DNA from: Octopus sinensis
Lineage: Eukaryota
Length of the DNA: 64,000 bases
Reading direction: 5' to 3'
Assembly: GCF_006345805.1 (NCBI RefSeq)
Contig: NC_043023.1
Location: 3,472,001-3,536,000 of the forward strand
Shown: positions 7,827 to 31,101 of the stretch, piece by piece
How the letters are laid out: each line of letters begins with the position of its first letter
Position numbering within the stretch: position 1 is the stretch's first letter
Notes under the pieces: model-generated
Database searches by the model: none
Seen by the model: the letters and a program-made list of their open reading frames with translations, nothing else
What the model was told of the DNA's origin: nothing
Program-made: the position numbers and the translations under genes

Positions 7827-7857
7827 CCAAACTAAATACAGGTGTAAATAGTACTTC

Positions 7858-10029: not shown

Positions 10030-10063
10030 TATATAACCACTTCTAACATCCATACACACAGCC

Positions 10064-10142
10064 AGTACCTTCTCAGACATGAATTGGTCAACAAAGTTAT
10101 GTTCAGACATATGCTTGTCTATTTATCATCATTGTAGGCACC
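10064..10142 (-). ncRNA. SNORD27: Box C/D snoRNA, U27/SNORD27-like, copy A (rps13 intron 5)
   Basis: ggtgcct-ac-a-ATGATGA (C)...AGACAAGCATATGT-CTGA (D')...TTGTTGA (C')...CTGA (D)-ga-aggtact, with a terminal stem. The guide is complementary to 18S CAUAUGCUUGUCU, and the D'+5 rule gives A27 (human)/A28 (yeast). Confidence 0.9.
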
Positions 10143-11018: not shown

Positions 11019-11098
11019 AGTACCTTCTCAGATATGAATTAATCAGCAAAGCTTTATTCAGACATATGCTTGTCTATTTTATCATCATTGCAGGCACC
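11019..11098 (-). ncRNA. SNORD27: U27-like box C/D snoRNA, copy B
   Basis: Same C, D' and D boxes, identical 18S guide and intact terminal stem. Confidence 0.88.
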
Positions 11099-12690
11099 AC
11101 AGAGGAAGATGGTGTCTCAATCTCAATCTCTCTCCTGCATACATACGATATATACGTCAACACAGCCCACACAATAGCTAGACTCACCACCAAAATCTGA
11201 CTGCATTCAACTGAGAGAGTTTAAGCCAGCTCCTATTGAGATCACCATACCTATTTCTCTACTACCCACAAGGGGCTAAACACAGAGAGGACAAACAAGG
11301 ACAGACAAAGGGATTAAGTCGATTACATCGACCCCAGTGCGTAACTGGTACTTATTTAATCGACCCCAAAAGGACGAAAGGCAAAGCTGACCTCGGTGGA
11401 ATTTGAACTCAGAACATAGCAGCAAACGAAATACCTATTTCTTTACTACCCACTAGGGGCTAAACACAGAGGGGACAAACAAGGACAGACAAATGGATTA
11501 AGTCGATTACATCGACCTCAGTGCGTAACTGGTCCTTAATTTATCGACCCCGAAAGGACGATCAGCAAAGTCGACCACGGTGGAATTTGAATTCAGAACG
11601 TAACGGCAGACGAAATGTGGCTAAGCATTTCGCCTGGCGTGCTAACATTTCTCCAAGCTCACTATTGAATTCACCATGCCACGGGCTAAAGCAGTCCATG
11701 CACATCTGTCAGCAGCATGATGAAGCCATTCCAGATACCAGTGAGGAACACCAGACTTAAGCAACTGTATATGTCATGTGCAATGTCTTCAGCTGACCAC
11801 CTCTCCACCTATGCCAACCCAGGGGAGGATCTGGTGCTATTGCCTTCCTCAAACCCCAACCCATGACCTCATTGCGATGGGAAGGTTAAACGATTAAGTG
11901 CCAGAGATATGCTGCAACCCGGGTAATGGCAAAATTCAGGCACTGTTCGTTCTGGAATCTGGTGGCTTGCTAATAATGGTGATGAACCACCTCTGCAGGA
12001 ATCCTGAGACAAGGTATAACACCTGGATGACCTGCCACCAGCCGTATACAGTGGCCTAGGAATACAGGCAAGAGCTGTTTGCAGAGACTGTAATCATCCC
12101 TTGAAACTCCTATGAACTCACTCAATACACCCAGAACATCAAAATCCTCATTCTATGTCCACATCTCCACAGCACCATGGATCAAACAGAATTTGTTGAG
12201 GAGAATTCTCTATGGTTAGATACCTTTCCAGCCACCAACTTTCACCTGTCCACAAATAAATAATTCACTCACAATGGCTGGACACATTTTCCACAGAAAC
12301 CCAACAACATTGCTTGTATGGCAATGATGATGTCCATTTGTAATTATCAGATGTCATATCAAGAATACAGGAACACACAGGTGTATGCACGGTTGCTCAG
12401 AGACAGTTCAATCCCCAACCACGTGGTTCTAAGTCCACAACCCAACTGCACAGCACCTTGGGCAACTGTCTACAATAGCACTAGGTTGACCAGTACTTTG
12501 CAAGTGAATTTAGGATGTAGATATGTGGCAATGTGTGTGCGGGCCTGTGTGCTTCTCCCACCACTTGACCACCGGTGTTAGTATATTGCAGTAAAACCCT
12601 CCACGGCAGTGTCCCTAGCCTGCTGATGGTTCAACGACAGTAACAAGGCAAAAGGTTTACATATACAAATGCTGCACAGCTTTTCTATCC

Positions 12691-12769
12691 AGTACCTTCT
12701 CAGACATGAATTGGTCAGCAAAACTATATTCAGACATATGCTTGTCTATCTATCATCATTGTAGGTACC
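12691..12769 (-). ncRNA. SNORD27: U27-like box C/D snoRNA, copy C
   Basis: Same boxes and guide. Terminal stem ggtacct/aggtact. Confidence 0.88.
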
Positions 12770-13339
12770 ATCATAGATCAAAATACTACTCCACGAGGAA
12801 GTTACAGTCCACTTAATACTCACACAATCCACAGAGCTCTTCTATACTATGCAGCTAAAGGATCCTTTATAGCTAGATACGCTTCCACCTGTCTCCAAAT
12901 AAATAATTCACTCACAGTGGCCGGACACGTTTTCCACAGAAAACCAACAACATTACTTGTATGGTAATGATGATGTCCACTCGTAATTATAATATAGGAA
13001 TCTTCCAACACACACACAGGTGTATGCACGGTTGCACAGAGATAGTTCAAGCCCCACCATGTGGTTCTAAGTCCACCTGAAACTGCATGACACCTTGGGC
13101 AAGTGTCTACAATAGCACTGGGTTGACCAGTACTTTGCAAGTGAATTTAGGAGATAGAAACTGTGTAGAAGTGTGGCAATGTGTGTGCGGGCCTGTGTGC
13201 TTCCCCCACCACTTGACCACTGGGGTTAGTATATTGCAGTAAAACCCTCCAAGGCAGTGTCTCTAGCCTGCTGATGGTTCAACGACAGTAACAAGGCAAA
13301 AAAGTTTACATATACAAATGCCGCACAGCTTTTCTATCC

Positions 13340-13418
13340 AGTACCTTCTCAGACATGAATTGGTCAGCAAAACTATATTCAGACATATGCTTGTCTATTT
13401 ATCATCATTGTAGGTACC
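13340..13418 (-). ncRNA. SNORD27: U27-like box C/D snoRNA, copy D
   Basis: Same boxes and guide. Part of a ~650-bp tandem duplication with copy C. Confidence 0.88.
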
Positions 13419-14590
13419 GTCATAGGTCAAAATACTACTCCACGGGGAAGTTGCAGTCCACTTAATACTCACACAATCCACAGAGCTCTTCTATACTATG
13501 TAGCTAACAAGCTGACAGTGGTTGCCCGTCTTGGTATGAAGTACAGTGCAGCCAATTGTCACTACACAAAGACCATAGCATGAACCATACCTTTGCCAAC
13601 TGTTTTAACCCTTTAGTGTTCGCATTATACTACCAAAATTAATCCTTTTTTATCCACATTGCTTTGAACTAATCATGCATTATCTTGTAACTATGAGATT
13701 ATGACGAGGTAGCCGTTAATTTTTAAAACGATATTGTAGGGTTAGTGTGAGAGACCAGATCTGGCCAGTTTGAACATAAAACGGGCAGAATACTTCTGGC
13801 CGGTTTAAATGACTCTGCACTCTGACATCTCTTGACCTCCACCCAACCTCAAGGACATGATAACGCAAAGAAGAGTGGACTACAGCAACACTCAGCCAGT
13901 GTTCATTTACAACAGAATAGATAGGAGCAATATAAAAGGACATGCCTTGCACAAAGAAACAAAGTGTGCAACTCTACACTAATCATTAACTGTTTCACCA
14001 CTAAGTTTTTGTTGAAATACACTGCAATAATTAGTAAAACAACAAGCAATTATTTAAGCCTTTCGTTACTGTATTTATTTTGAGATGTTCTGTGTTTCTT
14101 TTAATTACTTTAAATATAACAAAGAATTTAAGTAAAACAACCTAGTTATCATTCAGCTAGTGTCAGGATCATTAATTGTGATTCACCCTTTCGTTACTGC
14201 ATTTATTTTGAGAGGCTCTGTGTTTCCTTCAATTAATTTTGAATATAACAAAGAATTTAGTAAAGTAACTTAGTTATCATTAAGCTAGTGTTAGGAACAT
14301 AAATTGTGACTAAGGTTTGGTGGAAGATTTTAATTCAAAACTTATGAAAACAAGACATGTGTACAACAGAGCCGGTTTCAGCCAGGCAGGTAACAAAAGG
14401 GTTAAGGCTTGGTGGGAGATTTTAATTTAAAACTTATGGAAACAAGACATTTGTATTACAGAACCAGAGGTGGTTTCAGCCAGGTTGGTATCAAAAGGGT
14501 TAAGCTGATATCAGAGAATACCCAACCACACAGCCGGCCCCTAACATGTATATAAAACACCAACGGTTACACCAACAGTTACACACTGGG

Positions 14591-14664
14591 GTCTCAGATA
14601 TGAATTAATCAGCAAAGCTTTATTCAGACATATGCTTGTCTATTTTATCATCATTGCAGGCACC
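14591..14664 (-). ncRNA. SNORD27: U27-like box C/D snoRNA, copy E (3' terminal stem lost)
   Basis: Boxes and guide are intact, but the sequence after box D is gaccccagtgtg instead of gaaggtact. Flanks are shared with copy B. Confidence 0.7.
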
Positions 14665-15508
14665 ACACAGGAAGATGGTGTCTCAATCTCTCTCTCTCTC
14701 TCCTGCATACATACACACATCAACTCAGCCCACAAAATAGCTAGACTCACCACCAAAATCTTCTGACTGCATTCAACTGAGAGAGTTTAACCCAGCCCCT
14801 ATTGAGTTCACCATACCTATTTCTTTACTACCCACAAGGGGATAAACACAGAGAGGACAAACAAGGACAGACAAATGGATTAAGTCAATTAAGATGAAGT
14901 TTTGACAAAAAGCTTCAATTTAAATTAACTCTAAACCAGGCACCTTATGACCTTTGAGGGTCCATTTAAGATTTTGTTGTATTTGCAATAAATTGGTCAG
15001 GCTTCTACAATACACAGAATACTTTCAATTTTTGTATAAAATTCCTAAGATTTAATTATAAAAATACAGGATTTTCTTGAATGGCTAAGAGGGTCCATCT
15101 GAGTAAAAAAGGAATTGAAGGCTACTCTTTTACACTCACTGGACTGCAACCACTGCTTTGAATAGGTCTTACATTTTTTCTTATTTTGCTTGAAATCTGG
15201 TACTTATTTATCAGTATCTTTTGCTGAACTGCCGTAGAGGAGGAGCAACAAACAGGCACACATCCACACCCTATGGGCTTCCACTCAGTTTCCACCGACC
15301 TAATACACTCACAAGGAATTGGGTCAGCCTGGGGTTATTCAAACTAAAACCATGTAGTTACAAGGCAAGCTTCTTATCCAGAGATCCACACCTGCACCCT
15401 TATGTATTTCCAAACATGAACCATCCCAAGGAAAACCAACTACCCTGATCGATTATCTTCTAAAACCAGGCCCAGGCATAAATCCACCCCTGCAGTGTAT
15501 GACTCTCC

Positions 15509-15587
15509 AGTACCTTCTCAGACGTGAATTGATCAACAAAGCCAAGTTCAGACATATGCTTGTCTATTTATCATCATTGTAGGCACC
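15509..15587 (-). ncRNA. SNORD27: U27-like box C/D snoRNA, copy F
   Basis: Same boxes, guide and terminal stem, in flanks unrelated to the other copies. Confidence 0.88.
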
Positions 15588-16069
15588 AACCAAAACACAG
15601 CTCTATGGAACAACACAACAGAACCACGTTCTGTGCATCATATTCAAAGAGATCTAAACTCCACATCAAAGATTCACACGCCAACACCATACATAGATTA
15701 ATTATAGGATTCAACAGAACTTAGGTACATCAACACGTAGAATGCCAGAAAAGGCTACATACAATAACACAGGGTTCACAATGAAGTAAAACCTTGCTTC
15801 CCAACCATGCGGTTTCAGATTCCGTCCCACTGGGTTGCAGCCCTTTTATCTTGCACCTACCCTGTTGTAAATGAACACCAGCTGAGTGCTGGTGTAGTCC
15901 CATCTTCTTTGAGTAGTCATCTCTTAGAGGTAGGTTGAGGTTGGGTGGAGGTCAAGAGATGTCTGAGTGCAGAGTAATTTAAAACAGTTGGGTTCATGTA
16001 TGGTCTTTGTGAAGTGACAAATGGCTTTCCACTATAGACTCAAGCTGAACACACAAAAGCACATGTATA

Positions 16070-16269
16070 CAGTCATGGCCAGAAGTTTGGAACATAGGTC
16101 TGAATTGTTTTTTTAACTATCAAATGCTCAATGTTATATTTAATATTTAACTGACCACTGGATCAATTGTTAGGCAACTATATCTCTACGCTGTATATTT
16201 GAATTGGATTGTACTTGGGCATAATTTCAATTTTTAAAAAAAACTGTTCCAAACCTTTGGCCATGACTG
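16070..16269. mobile_element. Tc1-type MITE, 200 bp
   Basis: TIRs CAGTCATGGCCAGAAGTTTGGAACA / TGTTCCAAACCTTTGGCCATGACTG with TA on both sides. Confidence 0.85.
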
Positions 16270-17127
16270 TACACACATTTATTTTTATCCCTTGTTTCCA
16301 GTCATCAGGCTGCAGCTATGTCAGGACACACCCTTGAAGAATTCCTCATCCAAACAGATTGACCCCCACCAGTACCTAATCTATTGCTATTTTTTTTTTA
16401 CAGAATTGCTAAGTCACAGGAACATAAACAAATCAACAGTTTGCCAAATGATGAAACTGCTTGTTTGACACAGATGCTCATTTACAACCATCACATAATG
16501 CTGGAACAAGGACACATACAACAGGTTTCAATTTCTCCCAACCCAACCCAATCCACTCACAAGACTAGTCCACAGTGCCACAGTGGGACTGAGCTCAGAA
16601 TCACATAACCAAATCTGCATCAATGTACACCTACACATCTTCAAACACAACAAACTCAGTGTCGAAAATGCTGCAGTAGTCATGGACAATACCCCAACCC
16701 CATAAACACAAAGTTACCCACCCTCTTTTCTTATTTCTTTATTGCTTACAAGGGGCTAAACATAGAGGGGACAAACAAAGGGATTAAGTCGATTACATCA
16801 GCCCCAGTGCATAACTGGTACTTAATTTATCAACCCCAAAAGGATGAAAGGCAAAGTTGACCTCGGCAGAATTTGAACTCAAAACTTAGCGGCAGGCGAA
16901 ATACCGCTAAGCCTTTCGTCCGGCATGCTAACGATTCTGCCAGCTCGCCTGCCTTCTTTTCTACAGTACAAAAACAGCACCGAACCAAACAACTGTTGAC
17001 AACACAAGTTGACACCTGAAATACTCTTTGCTCACAAATGCAACAAACTACACCACCAGTCGCACCACCTGACACTGGGAGTAATACTAGTATCGGTAGT
17101 TGTAGTAGTAGTAGCAGAAATACTCAC

Positions 17128-17234
<107 letters not shown>

Positions 17235-17980
17235 TCAAAGAAAGAGTAAAATATAATACATTGACAAATGAGAGCATAACCCTGTGGCCTATGCCAGGGG
17301 TGTAACCAGCCCACTTATGCGCACCTTTTCCTTCATTGGACACTAAATCCTGCTTGCGAAGACCTGTTGAGGCAAGTGAAATTGATATCAAATTCGATGA
17401 CTGGCATCCGTGCTAGTGGGGCACAAAGAGCATCATCCAAGCGTGATCGTTGCCAGAGCGGCTAACTGGCTTCCATGCTGGTGGCAAGTAAAAGGCATCA
17501 TTCCAGTGTGATCGTTACCAGCGTCATTTTACTGGCACATGAAAAAACATTCAAGCAAGGTTGTTACCAGTACTGCCTGACAGGCACCCGTACCGGTGGC
17601 ACATAAAAGCACCCACTACACTCTCGGAGTGGTTGGCATTAGGAAGGGCATCCAGCTGTAGAAACTCTGCCAGATCAAGTTTGGAGCCTGGTTCAGCCAT
17701 CTAATTCGCCAGTCCTCAGTCAAATCGTCCAACCCATGCTATCATGGAAAGCAGATGTTAAACGATGATGAAGCAAGGCCAGCAGTTTTGACAGGAGTGG
17801 GGAGTAAATTAGATCAACTCCGAAAGGTGAAATTGACCCTGGTGGAATTTGAACTTGGAATGCAAAGCTGGATCAAATGCTCAGTATGCCAACACTGTTA
17901 CCAGTTGGCCACTTTATATAACACATTTTCTAATCCTGGCACAATGCCAGCTATTTCAGGGGAGGAGGCAAGTCAATTAA

Positions 17981-18200
17981 CCCTTTAGTGTTCACATTAT
18001 TCTGCCAAAATTAATCCTTTTTCATCTACATTGTTTTGAACTAATCTTGCATTATCTTGTAGCTATGAGATTTTGATGAGGTAGCTGTTAATTTTTAAAA
18101 CGACATTGTAGGGTTGGTGTGAGAGACCAGATCTGGCCAGTTTGAACATAAACAGGTAGAATACTTTTGGCCGGATATGGCCGGTTTAAATGCTAAAGAG
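17981..18200. mobile_element. piggyBac-like MITE (TTAA)
   Basis: TTAA-ccctttag...ctaaagag-TTAA. Same family as 27426-27647 and ~13607-13810. Confidence 0.7.
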
Positions 18201-18730
18201 TTAAATCAATCCCAATGTTCAACAGGTTCTTATTTTATCAGTCCCAAAAGGATGAAAGGCAAATTTGAACTCGGAACATAAAGCTAGATAAAATGTTGCT
18301 AAGCATACTAATGTGTCTGCCTTAACTTGCTGAGAAATATTGCTTTCGTATTTTGGTAGAAGGCCGGCAATTTCAGGAGAGAAATGCTCAACTGGCATTT
18401 ATTTTACAGACCCCCAAAAGGATGAAAGCTAAGTTGACCTCGGTGGTATTTGAACCTGGAACATAAAGCTGAACAAAATGCAGCCAATGACTTTGCCCAG
18501 TGCGCTTCCAAAATACCATGAGAATTTTTATTCCTTAACCATTGACTAGTGATACCTGATCAGTATACACTACCCATTTTGGGTTCAAACCAACCAGATC
18601 AGGCTTCTCACACCTACAGTATGTCATTCTAAAAATAATGTCAAAATCTTGCATCCACAAGATAAATTCAAAACAATGTGAGTAAATAAGCACCACATTA
18701 GACAGAGTAATCTGAATGCTAAAGGGTTAA

Positions 18731-19273
18731 CCCTTTCGTTACTATATTTCTGACCAAAATACACCCCTTATGTGTTTCAATTAATTTTTAACGTAATCAT
18801 AAATTTAGTCTGGTTTCATTAAACAACTATAACTTTTTTATTTATCAATATATTAATATGATTTTTGGAAGATAATTTAATGAAATGTCCTCAACCAATT
18901 CTATACTATAATTTTTGTCACAAAGTGACTAATTGCAGGTAGATACAGGTAAATACAACAAAATATAAAATTATTAAAATTTTTGTTCAAACATCGCTAT
19001 AGAAAATGGGTTATTAGCTAATGAAATTCGTATCCATTTTTTGTCAGAATTACAAATTTTGAAAACACAATAGGAACAAATTTTGGAAAAAAATCTCCCA
19101 AAATTCACGGAATTAAAATTACACTTCGATCGTTGTACAAAACTGTATATGAACTGTTTACGAAGTATAATCACGTGTTTTCACGAATGTACTAAAGAGA
19201 TTTGCTCTGATATTCTCATTTAAATATGAATAGGTAAATACGGGCGGTTTTGGGCGGCTTGGTAACGAAAGGG
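18731..19273. mobile_element. piggyBac-like non-autonomous element
   Basis: Perfect 12-bp TIRs ccctttcgttac/gtaacgaaaggg flanked by TTAA. Confidence 0.8.
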
Positions 19274-19320
19274 TTAAACAGACAGGATGGTCACAGCCGG
19301 AACACCTTTGATCATGCCTA

Positions 19321-19560
<240 letters not shown>

Positions 19561-20986
19561 CTATTTAAGACACAAGGCTTGGAATTTGGGGGGAGGGGGA
19601 CTAGTCGATTATATCGACCCAAGAAATTCAATGGTACTTAATTCATCAACTCCGAAAGGATGAAAGCCAAAGTTGACCATGGTGGAATTTGAACTCAGAA
19701 TATAGTGACAGGCGATTCGGCCAACTTGCCACCTTAATAATAACGATCCTGACTACTATAGGCACATGGCCCGAAATTTTAGGGGAGGGGGCGCTAGTTG
19801 ATTACATTGACCCCCAAAAGACGAAAGGCAAAGTAGACCTTGGTGGAATTTGAACTCAGAAATGTAGAGACAGGCAAAATGCTACTAGCATTTTGTCCAG
19901 TGTGCTAATGATTCTGCCAGCTTCCTGCCTTGGGTAATACGACAATTATTAAAGGTACAAGAGAAGAGGTTGTGCTGTGGTTAAGTGAAAATCAATAAAA
20001 ATCGCTGGGTTCCAAAACATAAGGAGTTGACCTGTTCGACTAAGGCCTTCGTGGTGGTGCCCCTAGACGGCAACAAACCAACTTAAACAAGTAAATGATA
20101 AGAGGTCATCCAATGAAACTGGTCTACAAGAGCTTCTTGTGCAACAAAGGCAAAGATGATCTCTCTTTCAACTACTTAGAATTAGCTACCTTGCATACCC
20201 TCTTCACCTTGATGCCCTCTCTGTCCCACCAGGGACCTGGATCAAATACAAACAGCTAGTCATCCACCTCAGATAAAAATATCAATACATTTTGAGAACC
20301 AACGAGGATTTATCTCCCCACAAGTGATATAAACGGGTGTATTCTGCACCAAAAGCCAATATGATAGGTTCTCTCATAGTACTTACTTGTAACAAAACAC
20401 ATTTTAAGTGGGGATAAACATTCTCTCAAGTTATCTCCCGCAGTACAACCTGTCCTGACAGAACAGCCACTTTAAGTAGGGGTACTTCTCAGTATTAAAA
20501 CTACATATATACTATTAACTCACTGGCTAATCACAACATTAGCACCTGTTCTGGCACATTCTATATATCGCTGGCAGGGAGATGAATCACCACTGTCTCT
20601 AGCGGTCAAGAATCCACCATTGGCGAGTCCAAGGAAGGCCAAGATTCCGTGATCTGGTGATTTGGGCATTGGAGATGGTGGGGATGTCTCCCTGTTAGCA
20701 ATATAAACCAGAGTGCATTTCTCTCATGGAATCTACTGCAGTATAGCTTGTTCTAACAGAACACATTTAAGTGGGAATAAACATCACCTCTCGATGTGTG
20801 CATGTATAAATAAGGGTGAAGAACACCTGTAGGTTCACAATGTATATTATTTATTGAATCTTTGAAGAATTACAGATAGGAGATTCCATGTTTTTTGCTA
20901 GATGTACATACCTTTGTAACTTGTAATGCCTACAATTAAAACTATACGAAATTTTTTCAGACTTCTGTTTTGATAAATATACTTAC

Positions 20987-21065
20987 CAATTTTGGACGGC
21001 GTCAAACCCTTCTTGGCAAGTTTATAGATCTGTTCCTTAACATCATCTGATGACAGTTTCAACCA
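20987..21065 (-). CDS. rps13: rps13 exon 3 (WLKLSSDDVKEQIYKLAKKGLTPSKI)
   Basis: tttccacag|TGGTTGAAACTG...AAAATTG|gtaagt. 79 nt. Confidence 0.97.
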
Positions 21066-23178
21066 CTGTGGAAACAAACATTAAAGATAAGCAATAACAG
21101 TCGCATACGGATGACAAGCTTAAATGTACAACAATGATATTGTAACTATTCCATGCAATAAAATATCCAGGTGACATTATGACGACCATTTAATGCGCAC
21201 GTTTCTATCCTTGCTTGGGTCAAATGGAATTCATCAAAGCAAATTCTCTAAGGTCAAACAACACTTTGTCTCTCTACAAAAGTTCATTAAGAGATTCTCA
21301 CCTCTCTTCCCCACCACACATCAGAAGCATAGAACAAATGAGTTTACATCCTAATTTCACCCACAGCTAGGCTTTGCAATACTTAAATTTATTATTAAGT
21401 CCTTCATTTAATGCTGTGCACTATATCATCATCTTTGTTTAGCATCCGCTTTCCATGCTAGCATGGGTTGGACAGTGGACGGTGCAACTGGGGTCTGGGA
21501 AGCCGGAAGGCTGCACCAGGCCCAGTCTGATCTGGCAATGTTTCTACGGCTGGATGTCCTTCCTAACGCCAACCATTCCGTGAGTGTAGTGGGTGCTTTT
21601 TACGTGCCAGACGAGGCTGGCAAATGGCCACGATCGGATGGTGCTTTTTACGTGCCACCGGCACGGGGGCCTGGCGAGGCTGGCAACGGCCACATACGGA
21701 TGGTGCTTTTTACGTGTCATGTTCGGATGGTTCTCTTACATACCACCAGCACTGATATCACAGCTGCAAATTTCCATTGATGTTGATCGATTTTGATTTT
21801 CACTTGCCTCAACAGGTCTTCACAAGTAGAGTTTTGTATCCCAAGAAGGAAAGGTATGCATAAGTGGACTGGCTACATCCCATGTAGAGGCCACGGGTTA
21901 TGGTCTCACTTGTCCTGCCGGGTCTTCTCACGCACAGCATAGTATATATATATATATTTTATCATCCCGCCACCTCACTGCATCTAAAGCTTATCTTTAC
22001 TATTAGTGGGAAAGTCTCTAATCATATTCTTCCATTAATAAAAATTTTGATGAAGGTTGTTCCTTGTATACGACCCTAGGAGACAGCAGCATTGGGAAGT
22101 CGGTACCAAACTTAAAACAAACAAAAAAGTACTGGCATTAATTTGACTAAAGCCTTCAAAACAGTGCCCCAACATGGCCACAGTCTGAAGCAAGCTCTTT
22201 TAATATCAATAACTCAGTAATGAGTTTCAAGTCTAGCCACTCAAACCGTGATCAATGTTGAATGACAGGGACACTCCTGATCCCCTAATGACTCACTCAA
22301 CTAGGGAGGACAGCCAAAGGGATTTCTAAGCTACTATGCTCTATAGACAAAGTATCAACTACCCATACAACAAATTTTCAATTATCAAAATTATCTCTAC
22401 CCCTACACTAGGGGTCGGGGAACTTTAACCGATTACCCCCAATCGAGGGGGTACATCAGTGTAAATAAATATATATTGGGGGTAATCGGTCAAAGTTCCC
22501 CGGCCCCTAGTCTAGGGGTAGAGATACTCTCTTTTACTTGTTTCAGTCATTTGACTGCGGCCATGCTGGAGCACCACCTTTCATCAAGCAAATCAACCCC
22601 GGGACTTATTCTTTGTAAGCCCAGTACTTATTCTATCGGTCTCTTTTGCCGGACTGCTAAGTGACGGGGACGTGTAAACACACCAGCATTGGTTGTCAAG
22701 CAATACTAGAGGGACAAACACAAACACACATATATATATATATACAACAGGCTTCTTTCCGTCTACCAAATCCACTCACAAGGCATTGGTCAGCCCGGGG
22801 CTATAGCAGAAGACACTTGCCCAAGATGTTACACAGTGGGACTGAACCCGGAACCAATTTGTTGTATGGTACTTGATACTTTATCTATAGAGCATAATTT
22901 GGAAGAAAAAATATAAACTCTTTGAATTCAAAAGGTCTGTTGAATCTATTACAAATATAGAAAGTATAAAATGCAATAAGCTTTGAAAAGGCAGCCTTCT
23001 TGTTTTGCTTTCTGTCTCCAATATAAAAAAAGCTTTTACTTATGTCTAATGAGTCATTACCCGCAAGAATTTCATTTTTACCCCAGTTCGGCAACTCCTG
23101 CTCTAGAGAATGTATCCTAATTACCAAACAATAATTAAGACCAGAGTCCACTAACGAGCAACTGCAATTAATGAGCAA

Positions 23179-23249
23179 GTCATTCAGAAAACTAAGCTCA
23201 ACACAATATTTCAGAGAGCTGGGGTTAGTTTCAATGACATCATAATGAC
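23179..23249 (-). ncRNA. Box C/D snoRNA guiding the 28S C equivalent to yeast Cm2948 (snR69-like), intron 2 copy
   Basis: gtcat-t-ATGATGT (C)...AACTAACCCCAGCTCT-CTGA (D')...GTGTTGA (C')...CTGA (D)-atgac. The guide pairs with 28S GAGCUGGGUUUAG at 12 of 13 positions, and D'+5 gives the C of GAGC. Confidence 0.78.
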
Positions 23250-24811
23250 CTGAACATTAACATCACCTATTTTTTCACTACACACAAGGGGCTAAACAAG
23301 GAGAAACGAATTTAACCGATTACATCGACCCCAGTGCATAACCGGTCCTTAATTCATCAACCCCAAAAGGATGAAAGGCAAAGTTGACCTCGGCAGAATT
23401 TGAACTCAGAACGTAGCGGCAGATGAAATACCTATTTCTTTATTACCCACAAGGGGCTAAACAAGGACAGACATAGGTATTAAGTCAATTACATCGACCC
23501 CAGTGTGTAACTGGTACTTAATTTATCGACCTCGAAAGGATGAAAGGCAAAGACGACCTCGGCAGAATTTGAACTCACAACGTAACGCAGACGAAATACC
23601 GCTAAGCATTTCACCCGGCGTGCTAACGTTTCTGCCAGCTCACCGCCTTTACATCACCCCACACTACATTTCCAGCAAAACAAAATCCATTATCAGCGTA
23701 AAGTTATGGCTGTGTGAATTAACCCTTTCTTTACCAACCCACCTGTAGGCACCCAATTGGAATTTCACTATGTAAACAATTGAGTTACACTGGTGGTCCT
23801 TAACTATTTTTTTACCTGTGGACTTCTTTGGCTACTAATCTATTCTGGCGGACTCCCATAGCCACACAATATTTGAAAACTAGTTTTATAGGCGCAGGAG
23901 TGGCTGTGTGGTAAGTAGCTTGTTTACCAACCACATGGTTCCGGGTTCAGTCCCACTGCGTGGCACCTTAGGCAAGTGTCTTCTACTATAGCCTCGGGCC
24001 GACCAAAGCCTTGTGAGTGGATTTGGTAGACGGAAATTGAAAGAAGCCCGTCGTATATATGTATATGTGTCTGTGTTTGTCCCTCTAGCATTGCTTGACA
24101 TCCGATGCTGGTGTGTTTATGTCCCCGTTACTTAGCGGTTCGGCAAAAGAGACCGATAGAATAAGTACTGGGCTTACAAAAGAATATGTCCCGGGGTCGA
24201 GTTGCTCGATTAAAGGCGGTGCTCCAGCATGGCCGCAGCCAAATGACTGAAACGTGTAAAAGAGTAAAGATATTCCTCTCAAAATTTCTATTTTGCTTTT
24301 CATACAAACTTTTGTAGGTTGGCAATAGTAATTGTCTGAAAGAACAGGCTTCAGTGGCTAGAAACATGAAACTATGTAAAACAGAAAGGAACTTTTCCTT
24401 TAGATGTAGTGATTGCCAGAAAAGCAACCAATAAATCTAAAGCAAAAGTTTCTTTCACAGACCCTTAAAATACCAGTGTATCCCAAATTTGCTAATTAGC
24501 TCGTGTGGATCCCCTAGAAGTCACATAGACTGGTTGAGAATTACTGAGTTATACCAACATTATTTTACATATCTGGGCATTGAATTTTTGGATATTTTTT
24601 TTCCTCCCCAATTTTTACCACTTCAATTTTCTGAAATGTTGCACTACGGATGACAACTGGATAATCAGCTTCATGTTGTCAAGTAGCAAATTTGACTTCA
24701 AAGTTCTTTTGAAAGATATATAGAAGACCTGTCCAAGGTGTCACGTAACGGGACTGAACCACACAGGTATGTCTATCAACAAGTAAAAGATAATCCACTG
24801 TGTATACTTAC

Positions 24812-24860
24812 TGTTGGCACTGAACGACGGTATGGTAGCGCTGATTGGGATATACCCTTT
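24812..24860 (-). CDS. rps13: rps13 exon 2 (KGISQSALPYRRSVPT)
   Basis: ctctctgcag|AAAGGGTATATCC...GTGCCAACA|gtaagt. 49 nt, phase-compatible with exons 1 and 3. Confidence 0.97.
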
Positions 24861-24998
24861 CTGCAGAGAGAGAGAGAGAAAACATTATTATTATTATTAT
24901 TATTACTACAAAACCTGGTATAGCAACAGCATAACCCATTCAAACACTTTCTGCTCACAAGTTTCTATTCTCAACCAAAACTCTGCTAGAAAGACTAT

Positions 24999-25208
24999 TG
25001 GCCCAGTGGTTAGGGCAGCGGACTCGCGGTCGTAGAATCGCGGTTTCGATTCCCAGACCGGGCGCTGGTCCCTGCTGTACTCTTTCTTCTGTTGGCCTGC
25101 TCGCTTAGCCAGCAGGGTGGCGCCATTCGAATGCTAAAAAACAATGCGAACGCATTGTGACCAGCGATGTGTAACTACATCTGATGGACTGGTCGGTTAC
25201 GTGATATC
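24999..25208 (+). mobile_element. tRNA-Arg-like SINE (also 38290-38600, 56190-56456 minus, 60445-60745, 62345-62650)
   Basis: tggcccagtggttagggcagcggactcgcgg...ggtttcgattccc head. Present only in duplication unit 1, so it inserted after the duplication. Confidence 0.75.
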
Positions 25209-25421
25209 TAGATGGCGGTGCCCCAGCATGGCCACAGCTCATGAGCTGAAACTAGATAAAATAAATAATATTCTGAGTGTAGTTGCTGCTATTTCTAGCT
25301 ATAATCTTCATTTAACCCTTTGTCTTTTAAACCAGCTAGATGTGGCCCCTCACACCTATGCTACAATGTTATTCTAAAAAAATAAGCAATAGCATTATCA
25401 AAATCTAAGAGAAACAAGGCA

Positions 25422-25502
25422 GTCATTCAGAAAAACTATACTCGTCAGGAGTAAAAAGATTACTCAGAGAGCTGGGGTTAGTTTCAATAACATCATAATG
25501 AC
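25422..25502 (-). ncRNA. snR69-like box C/D snoRNA, intron 1 copy 1
   Basis: Same C box, guide, D' box and gtcat/atgac stem. C' candidate CTGACGA. Confidence 0.78.
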
Positions 25503-25682
25503 TTAGGATAGGAACAGATAGATAGAATATGCAGTGCTACTTGGGTGTGATCTACAACTTAAAAGGCGATTACTTTTCAATTTCTAAAAGCCCTCAAGAC
25601 TTTAACGGTGCAAAAGCCATGGCTGCCAAACTCATCAGTTTATCCTCACTGGAAATGTTTTCTCTATTATGCTGATTTCATC

Positions 25683-25965
25683 ATCATCATCATTTAACGT
25701 CCGCTTTCCATGCTAGCATGGGTTGGACGGTTCAACTGGTCTGTGAAGCCAGAAGGCTGCTTCAGGCCCAGTCTGATCTGGCAGTGTTTCTACGGCTGGA
25801 TGCCCTTCCTGACGCCAACCACTCCGAGAGTGTAGTGGGTGCTTTTTACGTGCCAGACGGAGGTGGCAGGCGGCCACGGACGGATGGTGCTTTTTACGTG
25901 CCACCGGCACAGGGGCCAGACGAGGCTGGCAACGGCCACGAACGGATAGTGCTTTTTACATGCCA
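25683..25965 (-). mobile_element. Third SINE-like family with (GAT)n tail (also 8468-8690, 17290-17770 plus, 21430-21945, 26853-27340, 37955-38200, 48070-48245, 55080-55345)
   Basis: Conserved ...gagtggttggcgttaggaagggcatccagc...ttaaacgatgatgatg. Confidence 0.75.
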
Positions 25966-26171
25966 TTGCTACTTTTCGGTGTCAAATTTTAGAATTTTTT
26001 TTCTTGTATTATTCAAGATACATCACTTAACTGTGATTGGTTCAACAGGTATCGTGAAATTTACTCATATGGTTTCCTTTAACTGAATGGAAAAAATAGT
26101 AGGAACTTTAAGAGCCTGTGCAAATTGATGAAGTTCAGTCTGCAAGATGCCAAAAATACAACTGAAGCAGT

Positions 26172-26332
26172 ATGCTGCAAGGAGACCATGTCCCTGATTC
26201 AAATGATAGTGAAGCTGAAGTAGAAGACAACGGAAACCAAGGAAGATGCATCAATGGACTCTGGGCCTTTGGACTGAAGAACGGTGGAAATTGTCGCTAT
26301 TTTTATGTAGAAAAAAATGAAATCCTAAAACA
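26172..26332 (+). mobile_element. Merlin/IS1595-like transposase fragment at a duplication junction
   Basis: Translates QGDHV...NQGRCINGLWAFGLKNGGNCRYFYVEK, resembling the Merlin/ISXO2 motif GxxVxIDE...NRGR....WVFG....R.F.V..R (recognised by eye). Confidence 0.55.
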
Positions 26333-26356
26333 CTGATTGGGATATATACCCTTTCT
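26333..26356 (-). pseudogene. Partial duplicate of rps13 exon 2 with intact acceptor
   Basis: ctctctgcag|AAAGGGTATATATCCCAATCAG: the first 20 nt of exon 2 with a 2-nt TA insertion, then unrelated sequence. Confidence 0.85.
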
Positions 26357-26640
26357 GCAGAGAGAGAGAGAGAGAGAGAACATTATTATTATTGCTACAA
26401 ACAGCAGCATAACCCATTCAAACACTTTCTGGTCACAAAAGATTCTATCCTCAACCAAAATTCAAAACTCTGCAAGAAAAGCTATTATATTCTGAGTGTA
26501 GTTGCTGCTATTTCTAGCTACAATCTTCATTTAACCCTTTATCTTTTAAACCAGCTAGACCTGGCCCCTCACACCTATGCTACAATGTTATTCTAAAAGA
26601 ATAAGCAATCACATCATCAAAATCTAAGAGAAACAAGGCA

Positions 26641-26721
26641 GTCATTCAGAAAAACTATACTCGTCAGGAGTAAAAAGATTACTCGGAGAGCTGGGGTTAG
26701 TTTCAATAACATCATAATGAC
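26641..26721 (-). ncRNA. snR69-like box C/D snoRNA, intron 1 copy 2 (D' = CCGA)
   Basis: Near-identical to the 25422 copy except that box D' is mutated CTGA>CCGA. Confidence 0.68.
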
Positions 26722-27425
26722 TTAGGATAGGAACAGATTATATTACAGGGATCAAACCCTCATCAAGGACAGATAGTTGGGTGTGATCTACAACATAAAG
26801 GGCGATTACTTTAGGTTACTTTCTAGTTTACTTCTCAATTTCTTAAGACTTTCATCATCATCATCGTTTAGCGTCCGTTTTCCATGCTGGCATGGGTTGG
26901 ACGGTTCTACTGGGGTCTGTGAAGCCAGAAGGTTGCACCAGGCCCAGTCAAATCTGGCAGTGTTTCTACGGTTGGATGCCCTTCCTAACGCCAACCACTC
27001 TGTGAGTATAGTGGGTGCTTTTTACGTGCCAGACAGAGCTGGCAAACGGCCACGAACGGATGGTGCTTTTTACGTGCCACCGGCACGAGGCCAGTCAGGG
27101 CGGCGCTGGCAACTGTCACGAAACGTTCTCTTACATGCCACCAGCACTGGTAACACATCTGCAATTTCCATTGATCAATTTCGATCCTCACTTGCCTCAA
27201 CAGGTCTTCACAAGTAGAGTTTTGTGTCCCAAGAAGGGAAGGTATGCATACGTAGGCTGGCTCCATCCCATGTAGAAGGCCACGGGTTATGGACTCACTC
27301 GTCCTGCCGGGTCTTCTCGCGCACAGCACACTTCCAGAGGTCTCGGTCTAACGGTGCAAAAGCCATGGTTGCCAAACTCATCAGTTTATCCTCACTGGAA
27401 ATGTTTTCTCTATTATACTGATTAA

Positions 27426-27647
27426 CCCTTTAGTGTTCACATTATTCTGCCAAAATTAATCCTTTTTCATCTACATTGTTTTGAACTAATCGGGCATTAT
27501 CTTGTAGATATGAGATTTTGATGGAGGTAGCTGTTAATTTTTAAAACGATATTGTAGGGTTGGTGTGAGAGACCAGATCTGGCCAGTTTGAACATAAAAT
27601 AGGCAGAATACTTTCGGCCAGATATGGCCGGTTTAAATGCTAAAGGG
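27426..27647. mobile_element. piggyBac-like MITE inserted in duplication unit 2
   Basis: TTAA-ccctt...aaaggg-TTAA. Absent from units 1 and 3. Confidence 0.8.
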
Positions 27648-27889
27648 TTAAAATAAAATCCATTGCTACCTTTCAGTGTCAAATTTTAGAATTTTTTTTC
27701 TTATATTATTCAAGATGCATCATTTAATTGTTAGAGGTACTGAATCAATATGATTGGTTCTACATGTATCGTGAAATTTATTCATATGGTTTCCTTTAAC
27801 TATCATGGAAAAAAATGGTAGGAACTTTAGAGCCTATGCAAATTGATGAAGTTCATTCTGCAGGATGCCAAAAATACAAATGAAGCAGT

Positions 27890-28048
27890 ATGCTGCAAGG
27901 AGACCATGTCCCTGATTCAAATGATAGTGAAGCTGCAGTAGAAGATAACAGAAACCAAGGAAGATGCATCAATGGACTCTGGGCCTTTGGACTGAAGAAA
28001 GGTGGAAATCGTCGCTATTTTTATGTAGAAAAAAAAAATCCTAAAACA
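27890..28048 (+). mobile_element. Second copy of the Merlin-like transposase fragment
   Basis: ORF 27890..: MLQGDHV...NRNQGRCINGLWAFGLKKGGNRRYFYVEKKNPKTL. Confidence 0.55.
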
Positions 28049-28072
28049 CTGATTGGGATATATACCCTTTCT
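28049..28072 (-). pseudogene. Second partial duplicate of rps13 exon 2
   Basis: ctttctagag|AAAGGGTATATATCCCAATCAG. The AG is retained and the same TA insertion is present. Confidence 0.85.
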
Positions 28073-28824
28073 CTAGAAAGAGAGAGAAAACATTATTATT
28101 ATTATTACTACAAAACCTGGTATAACAGCAGCATAACTCATTCAAACACTTTCTGGTCACAAAAAATTCTATCCTCAACCAAAACTCTGCTAGAAAAGCT
28201 ATTATATGCTGAGTGTAGTTGCTGCTATTTCTAGCAATAATCTTCATTTAACCCTTTGTCTTTTAAATCAGCCATGATATTCAACCTGTTTTATGTTGAA
28301 AATCAGCTGGATCTGGCCCCTCACACCCAAGCTACAATGTTATTCTCAAAAAATAACCAATCACATCATCAAAATCTCAGAGAAACAAGGCAGTGATGAT
28401 TCATTCAAAACAATGCAAATAAATATTACATTCGATGGAATCTGATATTAAACGGTTAAACAACACACAATCATAACAATCCACAGGGAATCAGATAAAG
28501 AAATAAACCAGGCAATGTTTCACTGCCAAAGCCAAAAGCAAGTAGGGATAACAACTACCAAATTCAGAATCAATTTTCTGACAGCATGTCTTGTATCTTT
28601 TTTACTTGGTTTAATCAGAAGACTACAGACATCCTGCAGCACCACCTTGAAACGTTCAGTTGAACAAATCAACCTTAATAATTTTGTTGTTTTTTTTCTT
28701 TTGGGGCCAAACCACTAAGAGATGGGTGCACACACACTTCCTCAGTTTCTATCAGCCAAATGGTCTCATGAGGCATTTGTTGGCCTGGGGCTATATAGAA
28801 GAGACTTCTAGCATATCCAACAAA

Positions 28825-28905
28825 GTCATTCAGAAAAACTGTACTCGTCAGGAGTAAAAAGATTACTCAGAGAGCTGGGGTTAGTTTCAATAACATCATA
28901 ATGAC
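28825..28905 (-). ncRNA. snR69-like box C/D snoRNA, intron 1 copy 3
   Basis: Boxes, guide and stem are intact. Confidence 0.78.
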
Positions 28906-29406
28906 TTACGATAGGAACAGATATATTACTAGGATCAAACCCTCATCAAGGACAGATACATAGAATATTCAGTGCTATTTGGGTGTGATCTACAACTTAA
29001 AAGGCGATTACTTTTCAATTTCTAAAAACCCTCAAGACTTTAACGGTGCAAAAGCCAAGGCTGCCAAACTCATCAGTCTATCCTCACTGGAAATGTTTTT
29101 CTCTATTATACTGATTTAAATAACAAAATCTATTGCAATCTTTTAGTATCAAATTTTAGAATTAATTTTGTATTATTCAAGATGCATCAGTTAACTGTTA
29201 GATGTACTGAATCCATAAGTGATTGGTTCAACAGGTACCTTGAAATATATTCATATAGTTTCCTTTAACTAAATGGAAAAAAGTGGTAGGAACTTTAGAG
29301 CCTGTGCAAATTGATGAAGGATGCCAAAAATACAACTTTTCTGAAAATTCCAAAAAATAAAAATTTTCGAAGGTGTTATACGGGGTCCTTCGAATCTGTC
29401 ATTTTC

Positions 29407-29586
29407 GGTACTATTTAAGAAGAGTGGTCTCGGTGCGCGCACTCGCGTAAGCTAGTCGATCCTTACTTTGTATTATTTATTTTGTGTTTACTTTGCTAGG
29501 TAGTCGTTGTAGGATCGACCAGTCACGACTAGCTAGAACGGAAAAGCGAGTGCGCACACCGGGACCACTCTTCTTAATTTAGTACC
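29407..29586. mobile_element. Palindromic MITE-like element, copy 1 (rps13 intron 1)
   Basis: Arms ggtacta..aagaagagtggtctcggtgcgcgcactcg / cgagtgcgcacaccgggaccactcttctt..tagtacc, plus an inner IR tcgatcct/aggatcga. Confidence 0.7.
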
Positions 29587-30191
29587 CCATTTTCTGTTCA
29601 TAATTTCAAAATAACTTGACTCCTAAAGGATGAAAGGCAAAATCGACGACGGCTGAATTTTAACTCAGCGCGAAGGATCGGTAAAAATGCCACTAAGCAT
29701 TTAATCCGGTGTGCGAATGATCCTGCTAGCTGGCCACCACAAATGTTCATCCGTTCTACTATATATAGGTACAGTTCTCGGAGGAAGTAAAGAATGTGTG
29801 CATCACCCGTTTTCGGCCTAACAAGAAACCCTAAACACTGGGTGTACGTATTCTTAACTTTCGCCTGGGGCTAATGCAGTTTCGCACGAGATCGTGTATA
29901 GACTTGGATATGGCTGGGTTTCTAAGTTCTCATCGCAACCACGTGTTTCTGGGTTCAGTCCCACTGCGTGGCAGGTTCTTATTTCTTTACTGCCCACAAG
30001 GAGCTACACAAAGAGGGGACAAACAAGACGGACGGATTAAGTCGATTATATCGACCCCAATGCGTAACTGGGGTACTATTTGAGAAGTACCTAGGAATAT
30101 AGGTACTTTTTTTCGAGAAGTTTTCCCTCAATTTTGACCCTATTATAACTAGAAACACAAGATAAATCGAAATATTACGAATAAATATTTC

Positions 30192-30363
30192 GGTACTATT
30201 TAAGAAGTGGTCCCGGTGCGCGCACTCGGGCTAGCAAGTCGTGACTAGTCGATCCTTAATTTTTTTGTTTTATTTACTTTGCTAGGTAGCCGTTGTAGGA
30301 TCGACTAGTCACGACTAGCTAGCGCGGATGCGCGCACCGGGACCACTCTTCTTGTATAGTACC
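30192..30363. mobile_element. Palindromic MITE-like element, copy 2
   Basis: Same termini and inner IR as 29407-29586. Confidence 0.7.
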
Positions 30364-30702
30364 AATTCCTAAATTTGACTATAACAATTAAGCAGGCCAA
30401 TTTTTACTCCTAAGTATAATATAGCGGTACAAAATGATGCCATATTTGCGATGAAATGATTTCAAACCGATCGGGAGAACAAAAAATTATCCATTCTACA
30501 GCAATTACTAATTTCTCCCCGCCACCCCTATACGCAACACAAAGACACAGAATATATACCAACTATGAACCCATATACACATAAAAAACCCCACTACAAA
30601 CCGAAATATATGCACATAAAGCTATATACACCCGATAAATATACACGAAACGTCGCCCCACCGTCGTCGTCCACAACACGTGCGTGTCTCCCAAAAAAAC
30701 CG

Positions 30703-30714
30703 GCCGCCATCTTG
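30703..30714 (+). promoter_or_regulatory. YY1 consensus site in rps13 intron 1
   Basis: GCCGCCATCTTG matches the YY1 consensus about 400 nt downstream of the TSS, a common location in RP genes. Confidence 0.6.
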
Positions 30715-31078
30715 TAAAGTCTCCCACATTCAGCAAAACCCAGTAATTAACCACGAATTATTAATTAATTACACCGAATGGTACAAAATATTTCACTGAA
30801 TTTGTACAGCGTGGCGATATTTACGACTCTAACATGTGAATTATAATGAAAACTCGCTCAATTGTTCATCATCCATAAAATAAATTGCATCGTCTTTAGC
30901 ATTCACAGACGACAGCACATTTCACCAATTTATTTTCAAATTTCACCCAAAAAACGAATCGAATTCACTGAAATTTGTACATCAGGGGGACATTTATGAC
31001 TTTAATGAATAAAATATAGAAAAAAATTGCTGAAGAATTCGTTAATTATCGATGAAAATTAGATTAATGTTCACTTAC

Positions 31079-31101
31079 CCTGGACAGTGCATACGACCCA
31101 T
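31079..31101 (-). CDS. rps13: 40S ribosomal protein S13 (uS15), coding exon 1 (MGRMHCPG)
   Basis: Minus strand reads ATGGGTCGTATGCACTGTCCAGG|gtaagt. 23 coding nt, the same intron position as vertebrate RPS13. Confidence 0.97.

What the first reader, a model, noticed from the sequence alone, without database searches (positions are those of the whole stretch)
23179..28905. Second snoRNA family (four copies) targeting the 28S site equivalent to yeast Cm2948 (snR69-like)
Seen in sequence: one copy in intron 2 and three in intron 1 share C box ATGATGT, guide AACTAACCCCAGCTCT, D', D and a gtcat/atgac stem. The intron-2 copy has a completely different middle, so only the functional parts are conserved. 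From remembered rRNA sequence, the guide pairs with conserved LSU GAGCUGGGUUUAG (8 bp, one C:U mismatch, 4 bp). The +5 rule selects the C of GAGC, which is yeast Cm2948 (snR69), not the neighbouring Am2946/human Am4493 guided by U29. To my knowledge this C is not a standard human methylation site, so this may be an animal snR69-type guide that vertebrates lost (inference).
Basis: partly seen in the sequence, partly recalled or inferred. Interest (0 to 1): 0.72.

Follow-up and report, generated by a model that had tools for sequence, protein, structure and literature searches.

The report
Octopus snR69-type methylation guide snoRNAs

Summary
Four minus-strand copies share an exact 16-nt guide (chance about 0.01 matches), box C AUGAUGU, D' CUGA (CCGA in one copy), a degenerate C', box D CUGA and a 6-8 bp terminal stem. 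Copy 1 resembles the other three only across the roughly 75-nt RNA.

The host gene is RPS13/uS15. Three copies lie in intron 1 and one in intron 2. Intron 5 carries six SNORD27-like copies.

The guide core CCCAGCUCU abuts D' in the same register as the Rfam consensus of yeast snR69, plant snoR69Y, Aspergillus Afu_304, Dictyostelium DdR16 and sn3060. That register puts the C of GAGC, equivalent to yeast C2948, at the fifth position. The C:U mismatch is very likely real, because 123 of 123 eukaryotic LSU stretches have U there. It also has a precedent: Arabidopsis SnoR69Y pairs over only 8 bp.

Drosophila 28S Cm3480 is mapped and is absent from human and Xenopus. Expression and methylation in octopus were not tested. 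Verdict: a new member of a known kind, of low interest.

The parts
23176..23252 (-). snR69-type box C/D snoRNA, copy 1, in RPS13 intron 2. Box C 23243-23237, guide 23230-23215, D' 23214-23211, C' TGTTGA, box D 23187-23184, 8-bp terminal stem.
   Evidence: Weak Rfam hits: snoR69Y 19.8 bits, sn3060 19.7 bits.
25421..25503 (-). snR69-type box C/D snoRNA, copy 2, in RPS13 intron 1. Box C 25496-25490, guide 25483-25468, D' CTGA 25467-25464, C' TGACGA, box D 25430-25427, 6-bp stem.
   Evidence: snoR69Y 21.2 bits. Fold z-score -3.7.
26640..26722 (-). snR69-type box C/D snoRNA, copy 3, in RPS13 intron 1. Guide 26702-26687. Variant D' CCGA at 26686-26683.
   Evidence: snosnR69 RF00475 21.6 bits, with the alignment shown.
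28823..28907 (-). snR69-type box C/D snoRNA, copy 4, in RPS13 intron 1. Guide 28886-28871, D' CTGA 28870-28867, 7-bp stem.
   Evidence: snoR69Y 20.8 bits and DdR16 21.6 bits, with alignments.
7857..31101 (-). Host gene RPS13/uS15 coding region, from the ATG at 31101 to the stop near 7857. Six coding exons: 31101-31079, 24860-24812, 21065-20987, about 19523-19354, about 17228-17133, about 7891-7857. A pyrimidine tract (CTCTTTCTTTCCC) lies just upstream of the ATG.
   Evidence: tblastn and splice-site reading; 93% identity to vertebrate uS15.

Best explanation
[quoted passage not shown] They lie in sense orientation in introns 1 and 2 of the ribosomal protein S13 gene of an octopus. I recall the assembly accession as Octopus sinensis. 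The inferred mechanism runs as follows. The RNAs are released from the RPS13 pre-mRNA introns and fold through the terminal stem and the C/D kink-turn. They assemble with the Snu13, Nop56, Nop58 and fibrillarin proteins. The 16-nt guide upstream of D' then pairs with 28S rRNA at 5'-GAGCUGGGUUUAG-3', at the base of helix 93 next to the peptidyl transferase centre. The pairing is 8 bp, one C:U mismatch, then 4 bp. Fibrillarin would 2'-O-methylate the C paired to the fifth guide nucleotide upstream of D'. This C corresponds to yeast C2948, Arabidopsis C2949, Dictyostelium C3281 and Drosophila C3480. The region upstream of box D is not conserved in register between copy 1 and copies 2-4, so it probably does not guide methylation. 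It can pair with the 5' half of the D' guide within the same RNA. What is shown here: the motifs, the four copies, conservation limited to the functional parts, the host gene, the pairing register, and the identity of that register with known guide families. What is inferred: expression, snoRNP assembly and the methylation itself.
For: The guide is exact in four copies against 0.01 expected by chance. Box layout and stems are as described. Copy 1 is similar to copies 2 and 4 only over the RNA. The copies lie in sense orientation inside RPS13 introns. CCCAGCUCU followed by D' is the same register as the consensus of snR69 (AAACCCAGCUCU-UCGA), snoR69Y (UAAUCCCAGCUCU-AUGA), Afu_304, DdR16 and sn3060 (AAACCCAGCUCU-CUGA). 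In 549 kb of eukaryotic rDNA stretches, the GAGCUGGGUUUAG site is the only universally conserved site that pairs over at least 8 bp across position 5 (123 occurrences). The target C is 27 nt after the A-loop U. Arabidopsis SnoR69Y/C2949 is also an 8-bp duplex, at a site that has been mapped. Drosophila Cm3480 is mapped by RiboMeth-seq and nanopore. Copies 2-4 have a hairpin between D' and C', as the snR69 model does.
Against: Rfam scores are far below the gathering thresholds (20-22 bits against 45-50). Box C ends in U rather than A in all copies. The pairing has only 8 uninterrupted bp. The snoRNAs lie 0.56-2.1 kb or more from the downstream splice sites, and three share one intron, which is not the usual arrangement in vertebrates (the latter point is from my knowledge). 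There are no expression or methylation data. The octopus 28S sequence itself was not examined. No homologue was found in the RPS13 introns of five other lophotrochozoans.
Confidence: 0.75

Rival explanations
1. The RNAs are functional SNORD29/U29 (yeast snR71) orthologues that methylate the A two bases upstream (yeast A2946, human A4523, old numbering A4493) rather than the C. A weaker form is that they serve both sites, as was proposed for Drosophila CD3a-d.
For: snR69, snoR69Y, snR71 and SNORD29 belong to one Rfam clan, CL00051. In Drosophila the four U29-type CD3 paralogues are assigned to both Am3478 and Cm3480. The neighbouring family in the same gene is SNORD27-like. From memory, SNORD27 and SNORD29 share a host gene in human (SNHG1) and in the fly (Uhg1).
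Against: With D' = CUGA or CCGA the A lies opposite guide position 3, not 5 (sequence). No alternative D' box exists 2 nt downstream. A search for a U29-type register, CCCAGCTC-N5-GA, found nothing in the window. No SNORD29 or snR71 hit was listed at E <= 10, though clan competition can hide lower-scoring matches.
Confidence: 0.07
2. The guide's main job is not methylation of that C. It might bind both flanks of helix 93 as a folding chaperone, or it might target another RNA that carries a perfect AGAGCUGGGGUUAGUU match.
For: The 5' half of the guide, AACUAACC, is perfectly complementary to GGUUAGUU, which lies about 25 nt downstream in the same rRNA stretch (pattern; sequence). The single A-to-C change that creates the mismatch at the canonical site is what creates this second match. 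The mismatch is kept in all four copies.
Against: None of the related family consensus sequences shows this second complementarity. Plant and Aspergillus guides carry a different mismatch (U) at the same position. No full-length match with 3 or fewer mismatches was found at a conserved rRNA position. No complementary site exists in the window.
Confidence: 0.08
3. Some or all copies are inactive relics of tandem duplication and are not expressed as stable snoRNAs.
For: Copies 2-4 sit in recent tandem units of 1.2-2.2 kb whose flanks are still up to about 95% identical, so their conservation alone proves little. Copy 3 has a variant D' (CCGA). Three snoRNAs share one intron, far from the 3' splice site.
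Against: Copy 1 and copies 2-4 have lost all flank similarity yet keep 38 of 39 nt from the stem through D', plus box D and the 3' stem. That argues for selection on at least two lineages of the family. CCGA-like D' boxes also occur in the snR69 consensus (UCGA).
Confidence: 0.1

Closest known systems
Yeast snR69 (Rfam RF00475) and plant snoR69Y (RF01198)
   Same: Both are box C/D snoRNAs in which the D' guide core CCCAGCUCU directly abuts D', placing the C of GAGC (Cm2948 / Cm2949) at position 5. snoR69Y also has a mismatch opposite the same rRNA U and an 8-bp duplex. snR69 has a hairpin after D', as copies 2-4 do.
   Different: Nothing outside the boxes and guide is alignable, and scores are 20-22 bits against gathering scores of 45-50. 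The mismatch base is C here, U in plants, and absent in yeast. These copies are intronic in RPS13 and multicopy.
sn3060 (Rfam RF01153; nematode origin is from my memory)
   Same: The guide and D' are identical in register and nearly identical in sequence: AAACCCAGCUCU-CUGA against UAACCCCAGCUCU-CUGA (19.7 bits to copy 1).
   Different: sn3060 pairs perfectly where the octopus guide has the C:U mismatch. The rest of the RNA is unrelated.
Drosophila 28S Cm3480 and snoRNA:CD3a-d
   Same: This is an animal in which the equivalent C is experimentally methylated, with the site absent from human and Xenopus. It also has a four-copy paralogous guide family.
   Different: In the fly the C is a secondary prediction for U29-type snoRNAs whose primary target is Am3478. 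The fly sequences could not be read here. From memory their host is a non-coding Uhg gene, not RPS13.
Human SNORD29 (U29) / yeast snR71
   Same: It belongs to the same Rfam clan and pairs with the same rRNA stretch.
   Different: Its register is shifted by 2 nt, so the A (Am4523 / Am2946) is modified. That register is not present in this window.
Dictyostelium DdR16 (Rfam RF01566), and the Cm3281 guide CD15
   Same: The guide AAACUCAGCUCU-AUGA has the same register. The site Cm3281 is mapped as the equivalent of Cm2948.
   Different: It uses a G:U wobble instead of a mismatch, and the sequence is otherwise unrelated. Whether DdR16 and CD15 are the same RNA was not checked.

Membership tests
Box C/D snoRNA (class) | Box C (RUGAUGA) near the 5' end and box D (CUGA) near the 3' end, brought together by a terminal stem | tested here: met
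   AUGAUGU (6 of 7 positions) and CUGA in all four copies; stems of 6-8 bp.
Box C/D snoRNA (class) | Internal D' and C' boxes | tested here: met
   D' is CUGA (CCGA in copy 3). C' is UGACGA or UGUUGA, each one mismatch from consensus.
Box C/D snoRNA (class) | A guide directly upstream of D or D' that is complementary to a conserved rRNA site | tested here: met
   8 bp, a mismatch, then 4 bp to GAGCUGGGUUUAG. This is the only universally conserved rRNA site found with at least 8 bp across position 5.
Box C/D snoRNA (class) | Stable expression and association with fibrillarin/Nop56/Nop58/Snu13 | not testable with these tools
   No RNA or protein data were available.
snR69 / snoR69Y / sn3060 guide family (target = yeast C2948 equivalent) | The guide register places the C of GAGC at the fifth position upstream of D' | tested here: met
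   CCCAGCUCU followed by CUGA, the same as the family consensus lines. The C is 27 nt after the A-loop U.
snR69 / snoR69Y / sn3060 guide family (target = yeast C2948 equivalent) | Score at or above the Rfam gathering threshold | tested here: not met
   0 hits at gathering. Scores are 19.7-21.6 bits against 45-50. From my knowledge this is usual for cross-kingdom snoRNA homologues, in which only the boxes and guide are conserved.
snR69 / snoR69Y / sn3060 guide family (target = yeast C2948 equivalent) | 2'-O-methylation of the target C in this organism | not testable with these tools
   This needs RiboMeth-seq or an equivalent assay on octopus 28S.
SNORD29 / U29 / snR71 | The guide register places the A of GAGC (yeast A2946) at the fifth position | tested here: not met
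   The A is opposite guide position 3 (sequence). No CCCAGCTC-N5-GA pattern occurs in the window.

The most novel reading that the evidence does not exclude
The C:U mismatch kept in all four copies may be selected. On this reading the 16-nt guide is bipartite. Its 3' half pairs with GAGCUGG(G) on the 5' side of helix 93 and its 5' half (AACUAACC) pairs perfectly with GGUUAGUU on the 3' side. The snoRNP would then clamp the base of helix 93 next to the peptidyl transferase centre while methylating the C, combining a methylation guide with a folding chaperone.
Probability: 0.06. Interest if true: 0.55.

Novelty: new member of a known kind. Interest (0 to 1): 0.25.

Why it matters
The finding adds a cephalopod (lophotrochozoan) example to an ancient methylation guide whose target site traces back to the last eukaryotic common ancestor. 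It fits the picture already drawn from Drosophila: the methylated C next to the peptidyl transferase centre is ancestral to animals and is missing from vertebrates. It also illustrates snoRNA mobility and tandem amplification, since the RPS13 gene carries ten snoRNA copies of two families here and none of them in five other lophotrochozoans. Beyond annotation value and a candidate site for an octopus rRNA modification map, it opens no new question.

Tried and rejected
- **Rfam at gathering thresholds.** No hit in the window. Only sub-threshold hits appeared.
- **U29-type register.** A search of the window found none. No extra diverged copies of the guide turned up either.
- **Function for the box-D guide.** The registers differ between copy 1 and copies 2-4, and no conserved rRNA site with good pairing was found. 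The apparent 12-bp match of copy 1 to the same site is half G:U wobble, and I treat it as a by-product of internal complementarity.
- **A better rRNA target.** The only recurrent alternative is UUGGCUGGGGCGG, about 330 nt upstream. It pairs over 7 Watson-Crick bp plus 1 G:U starting at position 3, in 25 loci, and is weaker than the canonical site.
- **Conservation in other lophotrochozoans.** I fetched the RPS13 loci of Gigantopelta, Sinanodonta, Ruditapes, Owenia and Tubulanus. None holds an snR69-like or U27-like guide, and Rfam at gathering, run on two of them (Gigantopelta and Sinanodonta), gave no snoRNA hit. Pomacea RPS13 was not on record.
- **Literature.** Searches for Me28S-A3407, sn3060 and dUHG1 gave nothing usable. 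No paper on mollusc C/D snoRNAs was found, and no C. elegans rRNA methylation map.
Full report
**Observation.** The 16-mer AACTAACCCCAGCTCT occurs exactly four times in the 64-kb window. All four are on the minus strand, at 23215-23230, 25468-25483, 26687-26702 and 28871-28886, against 0.01 matches expected by chance. Each copy, read 5' to 3' on the minus strand, has the same layout:
- a stem arm ending in GTCAT, then one T
- box C ATGATGT
- a 6-nt spacer
- the 16-nt guide
- D' CTGA (CCGA in the 26.7-kb copy)
- a spacer
- a degenerate C' box (TGTTGA in the 23-kb copy, TGACGA in the others)
- 10-11 nt ending in TAGTTTT(T)
- box D CTGA
- the stem arm ATGAC

The stems extend to 8 bp (copy 1), 6 bp (copies 2 and 3) and 7 bp (copy 4). 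The RNAs would be about 77 nt (23176-23252) and 83-85 nt (25421-25503, 26640-26722, 28823-28907).

**Conservation pattern.** Copies 2-4 lie in tandem units spaced 1219 and 2184 bp apart. Their flanks are still about 80-95% identical, so their near identity says little on its own. Copy 1 is the informative one. In 1-kb comparisons its similarity to copies 2 and 4 is confined to the 72-83 nt of the RNA. Within the RNA, 38 of 39 nt from the stem through D' are identical, as are box D and the 3' stem. The D'-C' spacer (7 nt against 16 nt) and the C' box differ. This is the pattern expected of a box C/D snoRNA under selection for its boxes and one guide.

**Genomic context.** A single-exon ORF at 42481-44031 places the window on record CM016885.1 of assembly GCA_006345805.1. 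I recall that assembly as Octopus sinensis.

The minus strand carries a complete RPS13/uS15 gene:
- ATG at 31101, preceded by a pyrimidine tract (CTCTTTCTTTCCC)
- exons at 31101-31079, 24860-24812, 21065-20987, about 19523-19354, about 17228-17133 and about 7891-7857
- standard GT/AG boundaries
- a product 93% identical to vertebrate uS15

Intron 5 holds six copies of a SNORD27-like snoRNA (RF00086, 35-43 bits, E from 6e-5 to 5e-3). Its guide pairs over 13 bp with the 5' end of 18S.

The snR69-like copies lie 0.56 kb (copy 2) to 2.1 kb (copy 1) upstream of the next exon, and copies 3 and 4 lie further still. Three share one intron. This differs from the one-per-intron, roughly 70-nt-upstream arrangement that I recall as typical of vertebrates. 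Their fairly long terminal stems would fit assembly that does not depend on splicing; this is inference.

**Target.** The guide ends one base before D'. Counting back from D', the fifth nucleotide is a G. I scanned 120 eukaryotic rDNA stretches (549 kb) fetched from metagenomes with a pattern around the presumed site. The pairing x||||||||x||||xx to UGAGCUGGGUUUAGAC occurs in every stretch (123 occurrences). It is the only universally conserved site with at least 8 paired positions spanning position 5. The only recurrent alternative, UUGGCUGGGGCGG about 330 nt upstream, is weaker and occurs in only 25 loci.

The base opposite the guide's extra C is U in 123 of 123 stretches, so the C:U mismatch is almost certainly real in octopus too. 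Its own 28S was not available.

The selected C lies 27 nt after the U of the A-loop UG in 108 of 110 stretches. This equals the spacing from yeast Um2921 to Cm2948. The fly sites Gm3455, Am3478, Cm3480 and Cm3491 keep the same relative spacing minus one base.

**Comparison with known families.** No Rfam family reaches its gathering score. In E-value mode each copy gives weak hits:
- snosnR69: 21.6 bits
- snoR69Y: 19.8-21.2 bits
- DdR16: 21.6-22 bits in this scan (16.8 for copy 3)
- sn3060: 19.7 bits

The printed consensus lines are what matter:
- snR69: AAACCCAGCUCU-UCGA
- snoR69Y: UAAUCCCAGCUCU-AUGA
- Afu_304: AAUCCCAGCUCG-UCGA
- DdR16: AAACUCAGCUCU-AUGA
- sn3060: AAACCCAGCUCU-CUGA
- octopus: UAACCCCAGCUCU-CUGA

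The register is identical in all of them. It differs by 2 nt from the SNORD29/snR71 register that selects the neighbouring A. That register is absent from the window.

The plant and Aspergillus consensus also carry a mismatch (U opposite U) at exactly the octopus mismatch position. The Arabidopsis study states that SnoR69Y/C2949 is an 8-bp duplex at a mapped site (PMC8053127). The short interrupted duplex is therefore a family trait, not an argument against function. Copies 2-4 also have a 6-bp hairpin between D' and C', which matches the hairpin in the snR69 model.

**What is already known about the site.**
- Yeast Cm2948 is guided by snR69, which competes with snR71 for overlapping pairing (PMC8053091).
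- The site is mapped in Arabidopsis (Cm2949), tomato and tobacco (PMC11542601) and in Dictyostelium (Cm3281; PMC8817022).
- Those tables list no human equivalent.
- In Drosophila, 28S Cm3480 is mapped by RiboMeth-seq and nanopore. Its conservation code is DmYADd, meaning it is absent from human and Xenopus. It is assigned as a second target to the four-copy snoRNA:CD3a-d family, whose primary target is Am3478 (PMC11014333).
- snR69, snoR69Y, snR71 and SNORD29 form one Rfam clan (PMC3511168).

It is also implicit in the Rfam family sn3060, which I recall as nematode.

**Mechanism.** The best-supported reading is a canonical methylation guide. The RNA is released from the RPS13 intron, assembles on the C/D kink-turn, and pairs its D' guide with pre-28S rRNA at the 5' flank of helix 93. 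Fibrillarin then methylates the C.

The box-D guide region is not conserved in register: four U before box D in copy 1 and five in copies 2-4. It has no convincing conserved rRNA partner. It can pair with the 5' half of the D' guide (AAACUAA with UUAGUUU), and predicted folds use this helix. I take it as structural or neutral.

**A speculative point.** The A-to-C change that creates the mismatch also makes the guide's 5' half perfectly complementary to GGUUAGUU on the 3' flank of helix 93. Related families do not share this. I rate a bipartite clamp as unlikely, at about 6%.

**Limits.** Expression, snoRNP association and methylation were not testable. The RPS13 loci of five other lophotrochozoans hold neither snoRNA family. 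Residence in RPS13 therefore appears lineage-specific among the taxa sampled, in keeping with the known mobility of snoRNA genes.

**Verdict.** It is an ordinary new member of the snR69/snoR69Y guide family in a cephalopod. Interest is low (0.25).

Noticed in passing
window 10069-10137, 11024-11093, 12696-12764, 13345-13413, 14590-14664, 15514-15582 (minus strand): Six SNORD27/U27-like box C/D snoRNA copies lie in RPS13 intron 5 (RF00086, 35-43 bits, below the gathering score of 52). Their D' guide pairs over 13 bp with the 18S 5' end (the Am27/28 site). Their box-D guide pairs over 8 bp with the LSU sequence GCAUGAAUGG.
   Followed up: partly
window 7857-31101 (minus strand): This is a complete six-exon RPS13/uS15 gene with a pyrimidine tract just upstream of the ATG. 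It carries ten snoRNA copies of two families but no U14, which I recall as the snoRNA hosted by vertebrate RPS13. The RPS13 loci of five other lophotrochozoans (L122-L126) hold neither family.
   Followed up: partly
window 23184-23200 and the equivalent region in copies 2-4: The region upstream of box D (GAGCUUAGUUUU in copy 1) has the same sense as the rRNA target stretch and is complementary to the RNA's own D' guide (AAACUAA with UUAGUUU). Predicted folds use this helix.
   Followed up: partly
window 24377-24462 (minus strand) and 9552-9636 (both strands): Two hairpins in RPS13 introns 2 and 5 give weak miRNA-precursor-like Rfam hits (MIR7504 and mir-2076 at E 0.25-0.4; MIR6024, mir-3926 and mir-192 at E 0.0005-0.008). 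All are far below gathering scores.
   Followed up: no
window 42481-44031 (plus strand): A 516-aa single-exon ORF has a Myb_DNA-bind_5 (PF13873) domain. It was used only to locate the window in the assembly.
   Followed up: partly
window 11247-11614, 16717-16900, 19533-19716, 23244-23644, 29594-30071 and elsewhere: A dispersed SINE-like repeat family of about 170-185 nt, often in tandem pairs, fills the RPS13 introns. One pair lies directly upstream of snoRNA copy 1. A second repeat that encodes 'MGWTV...AFYVP' in spurious ORFs recurs at 21.4, 25.7, 26.9 and 37.9 kb.
   Followed up: no
window about 700-745 (plus strand) and 32262-32387 (plus strand): The sequence GTCTCACGAC-TG-CTGA is complementary to the LSU sequence GUCGUGAGAC, right next to the target site. 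It sits in a repeated element (CAGAATTAGAG...) that recurs near 32.3 kb. It is probably chance.
   Followed up: no
window about 2000-2200: A run of N (seen as X in the ORF translations) marks an assembly gap. It is flanked by long TA/CA microsatellites, which are also abundant at 44.7-45.8 kb and 51.6-52.1 kb.
   Followed up: no
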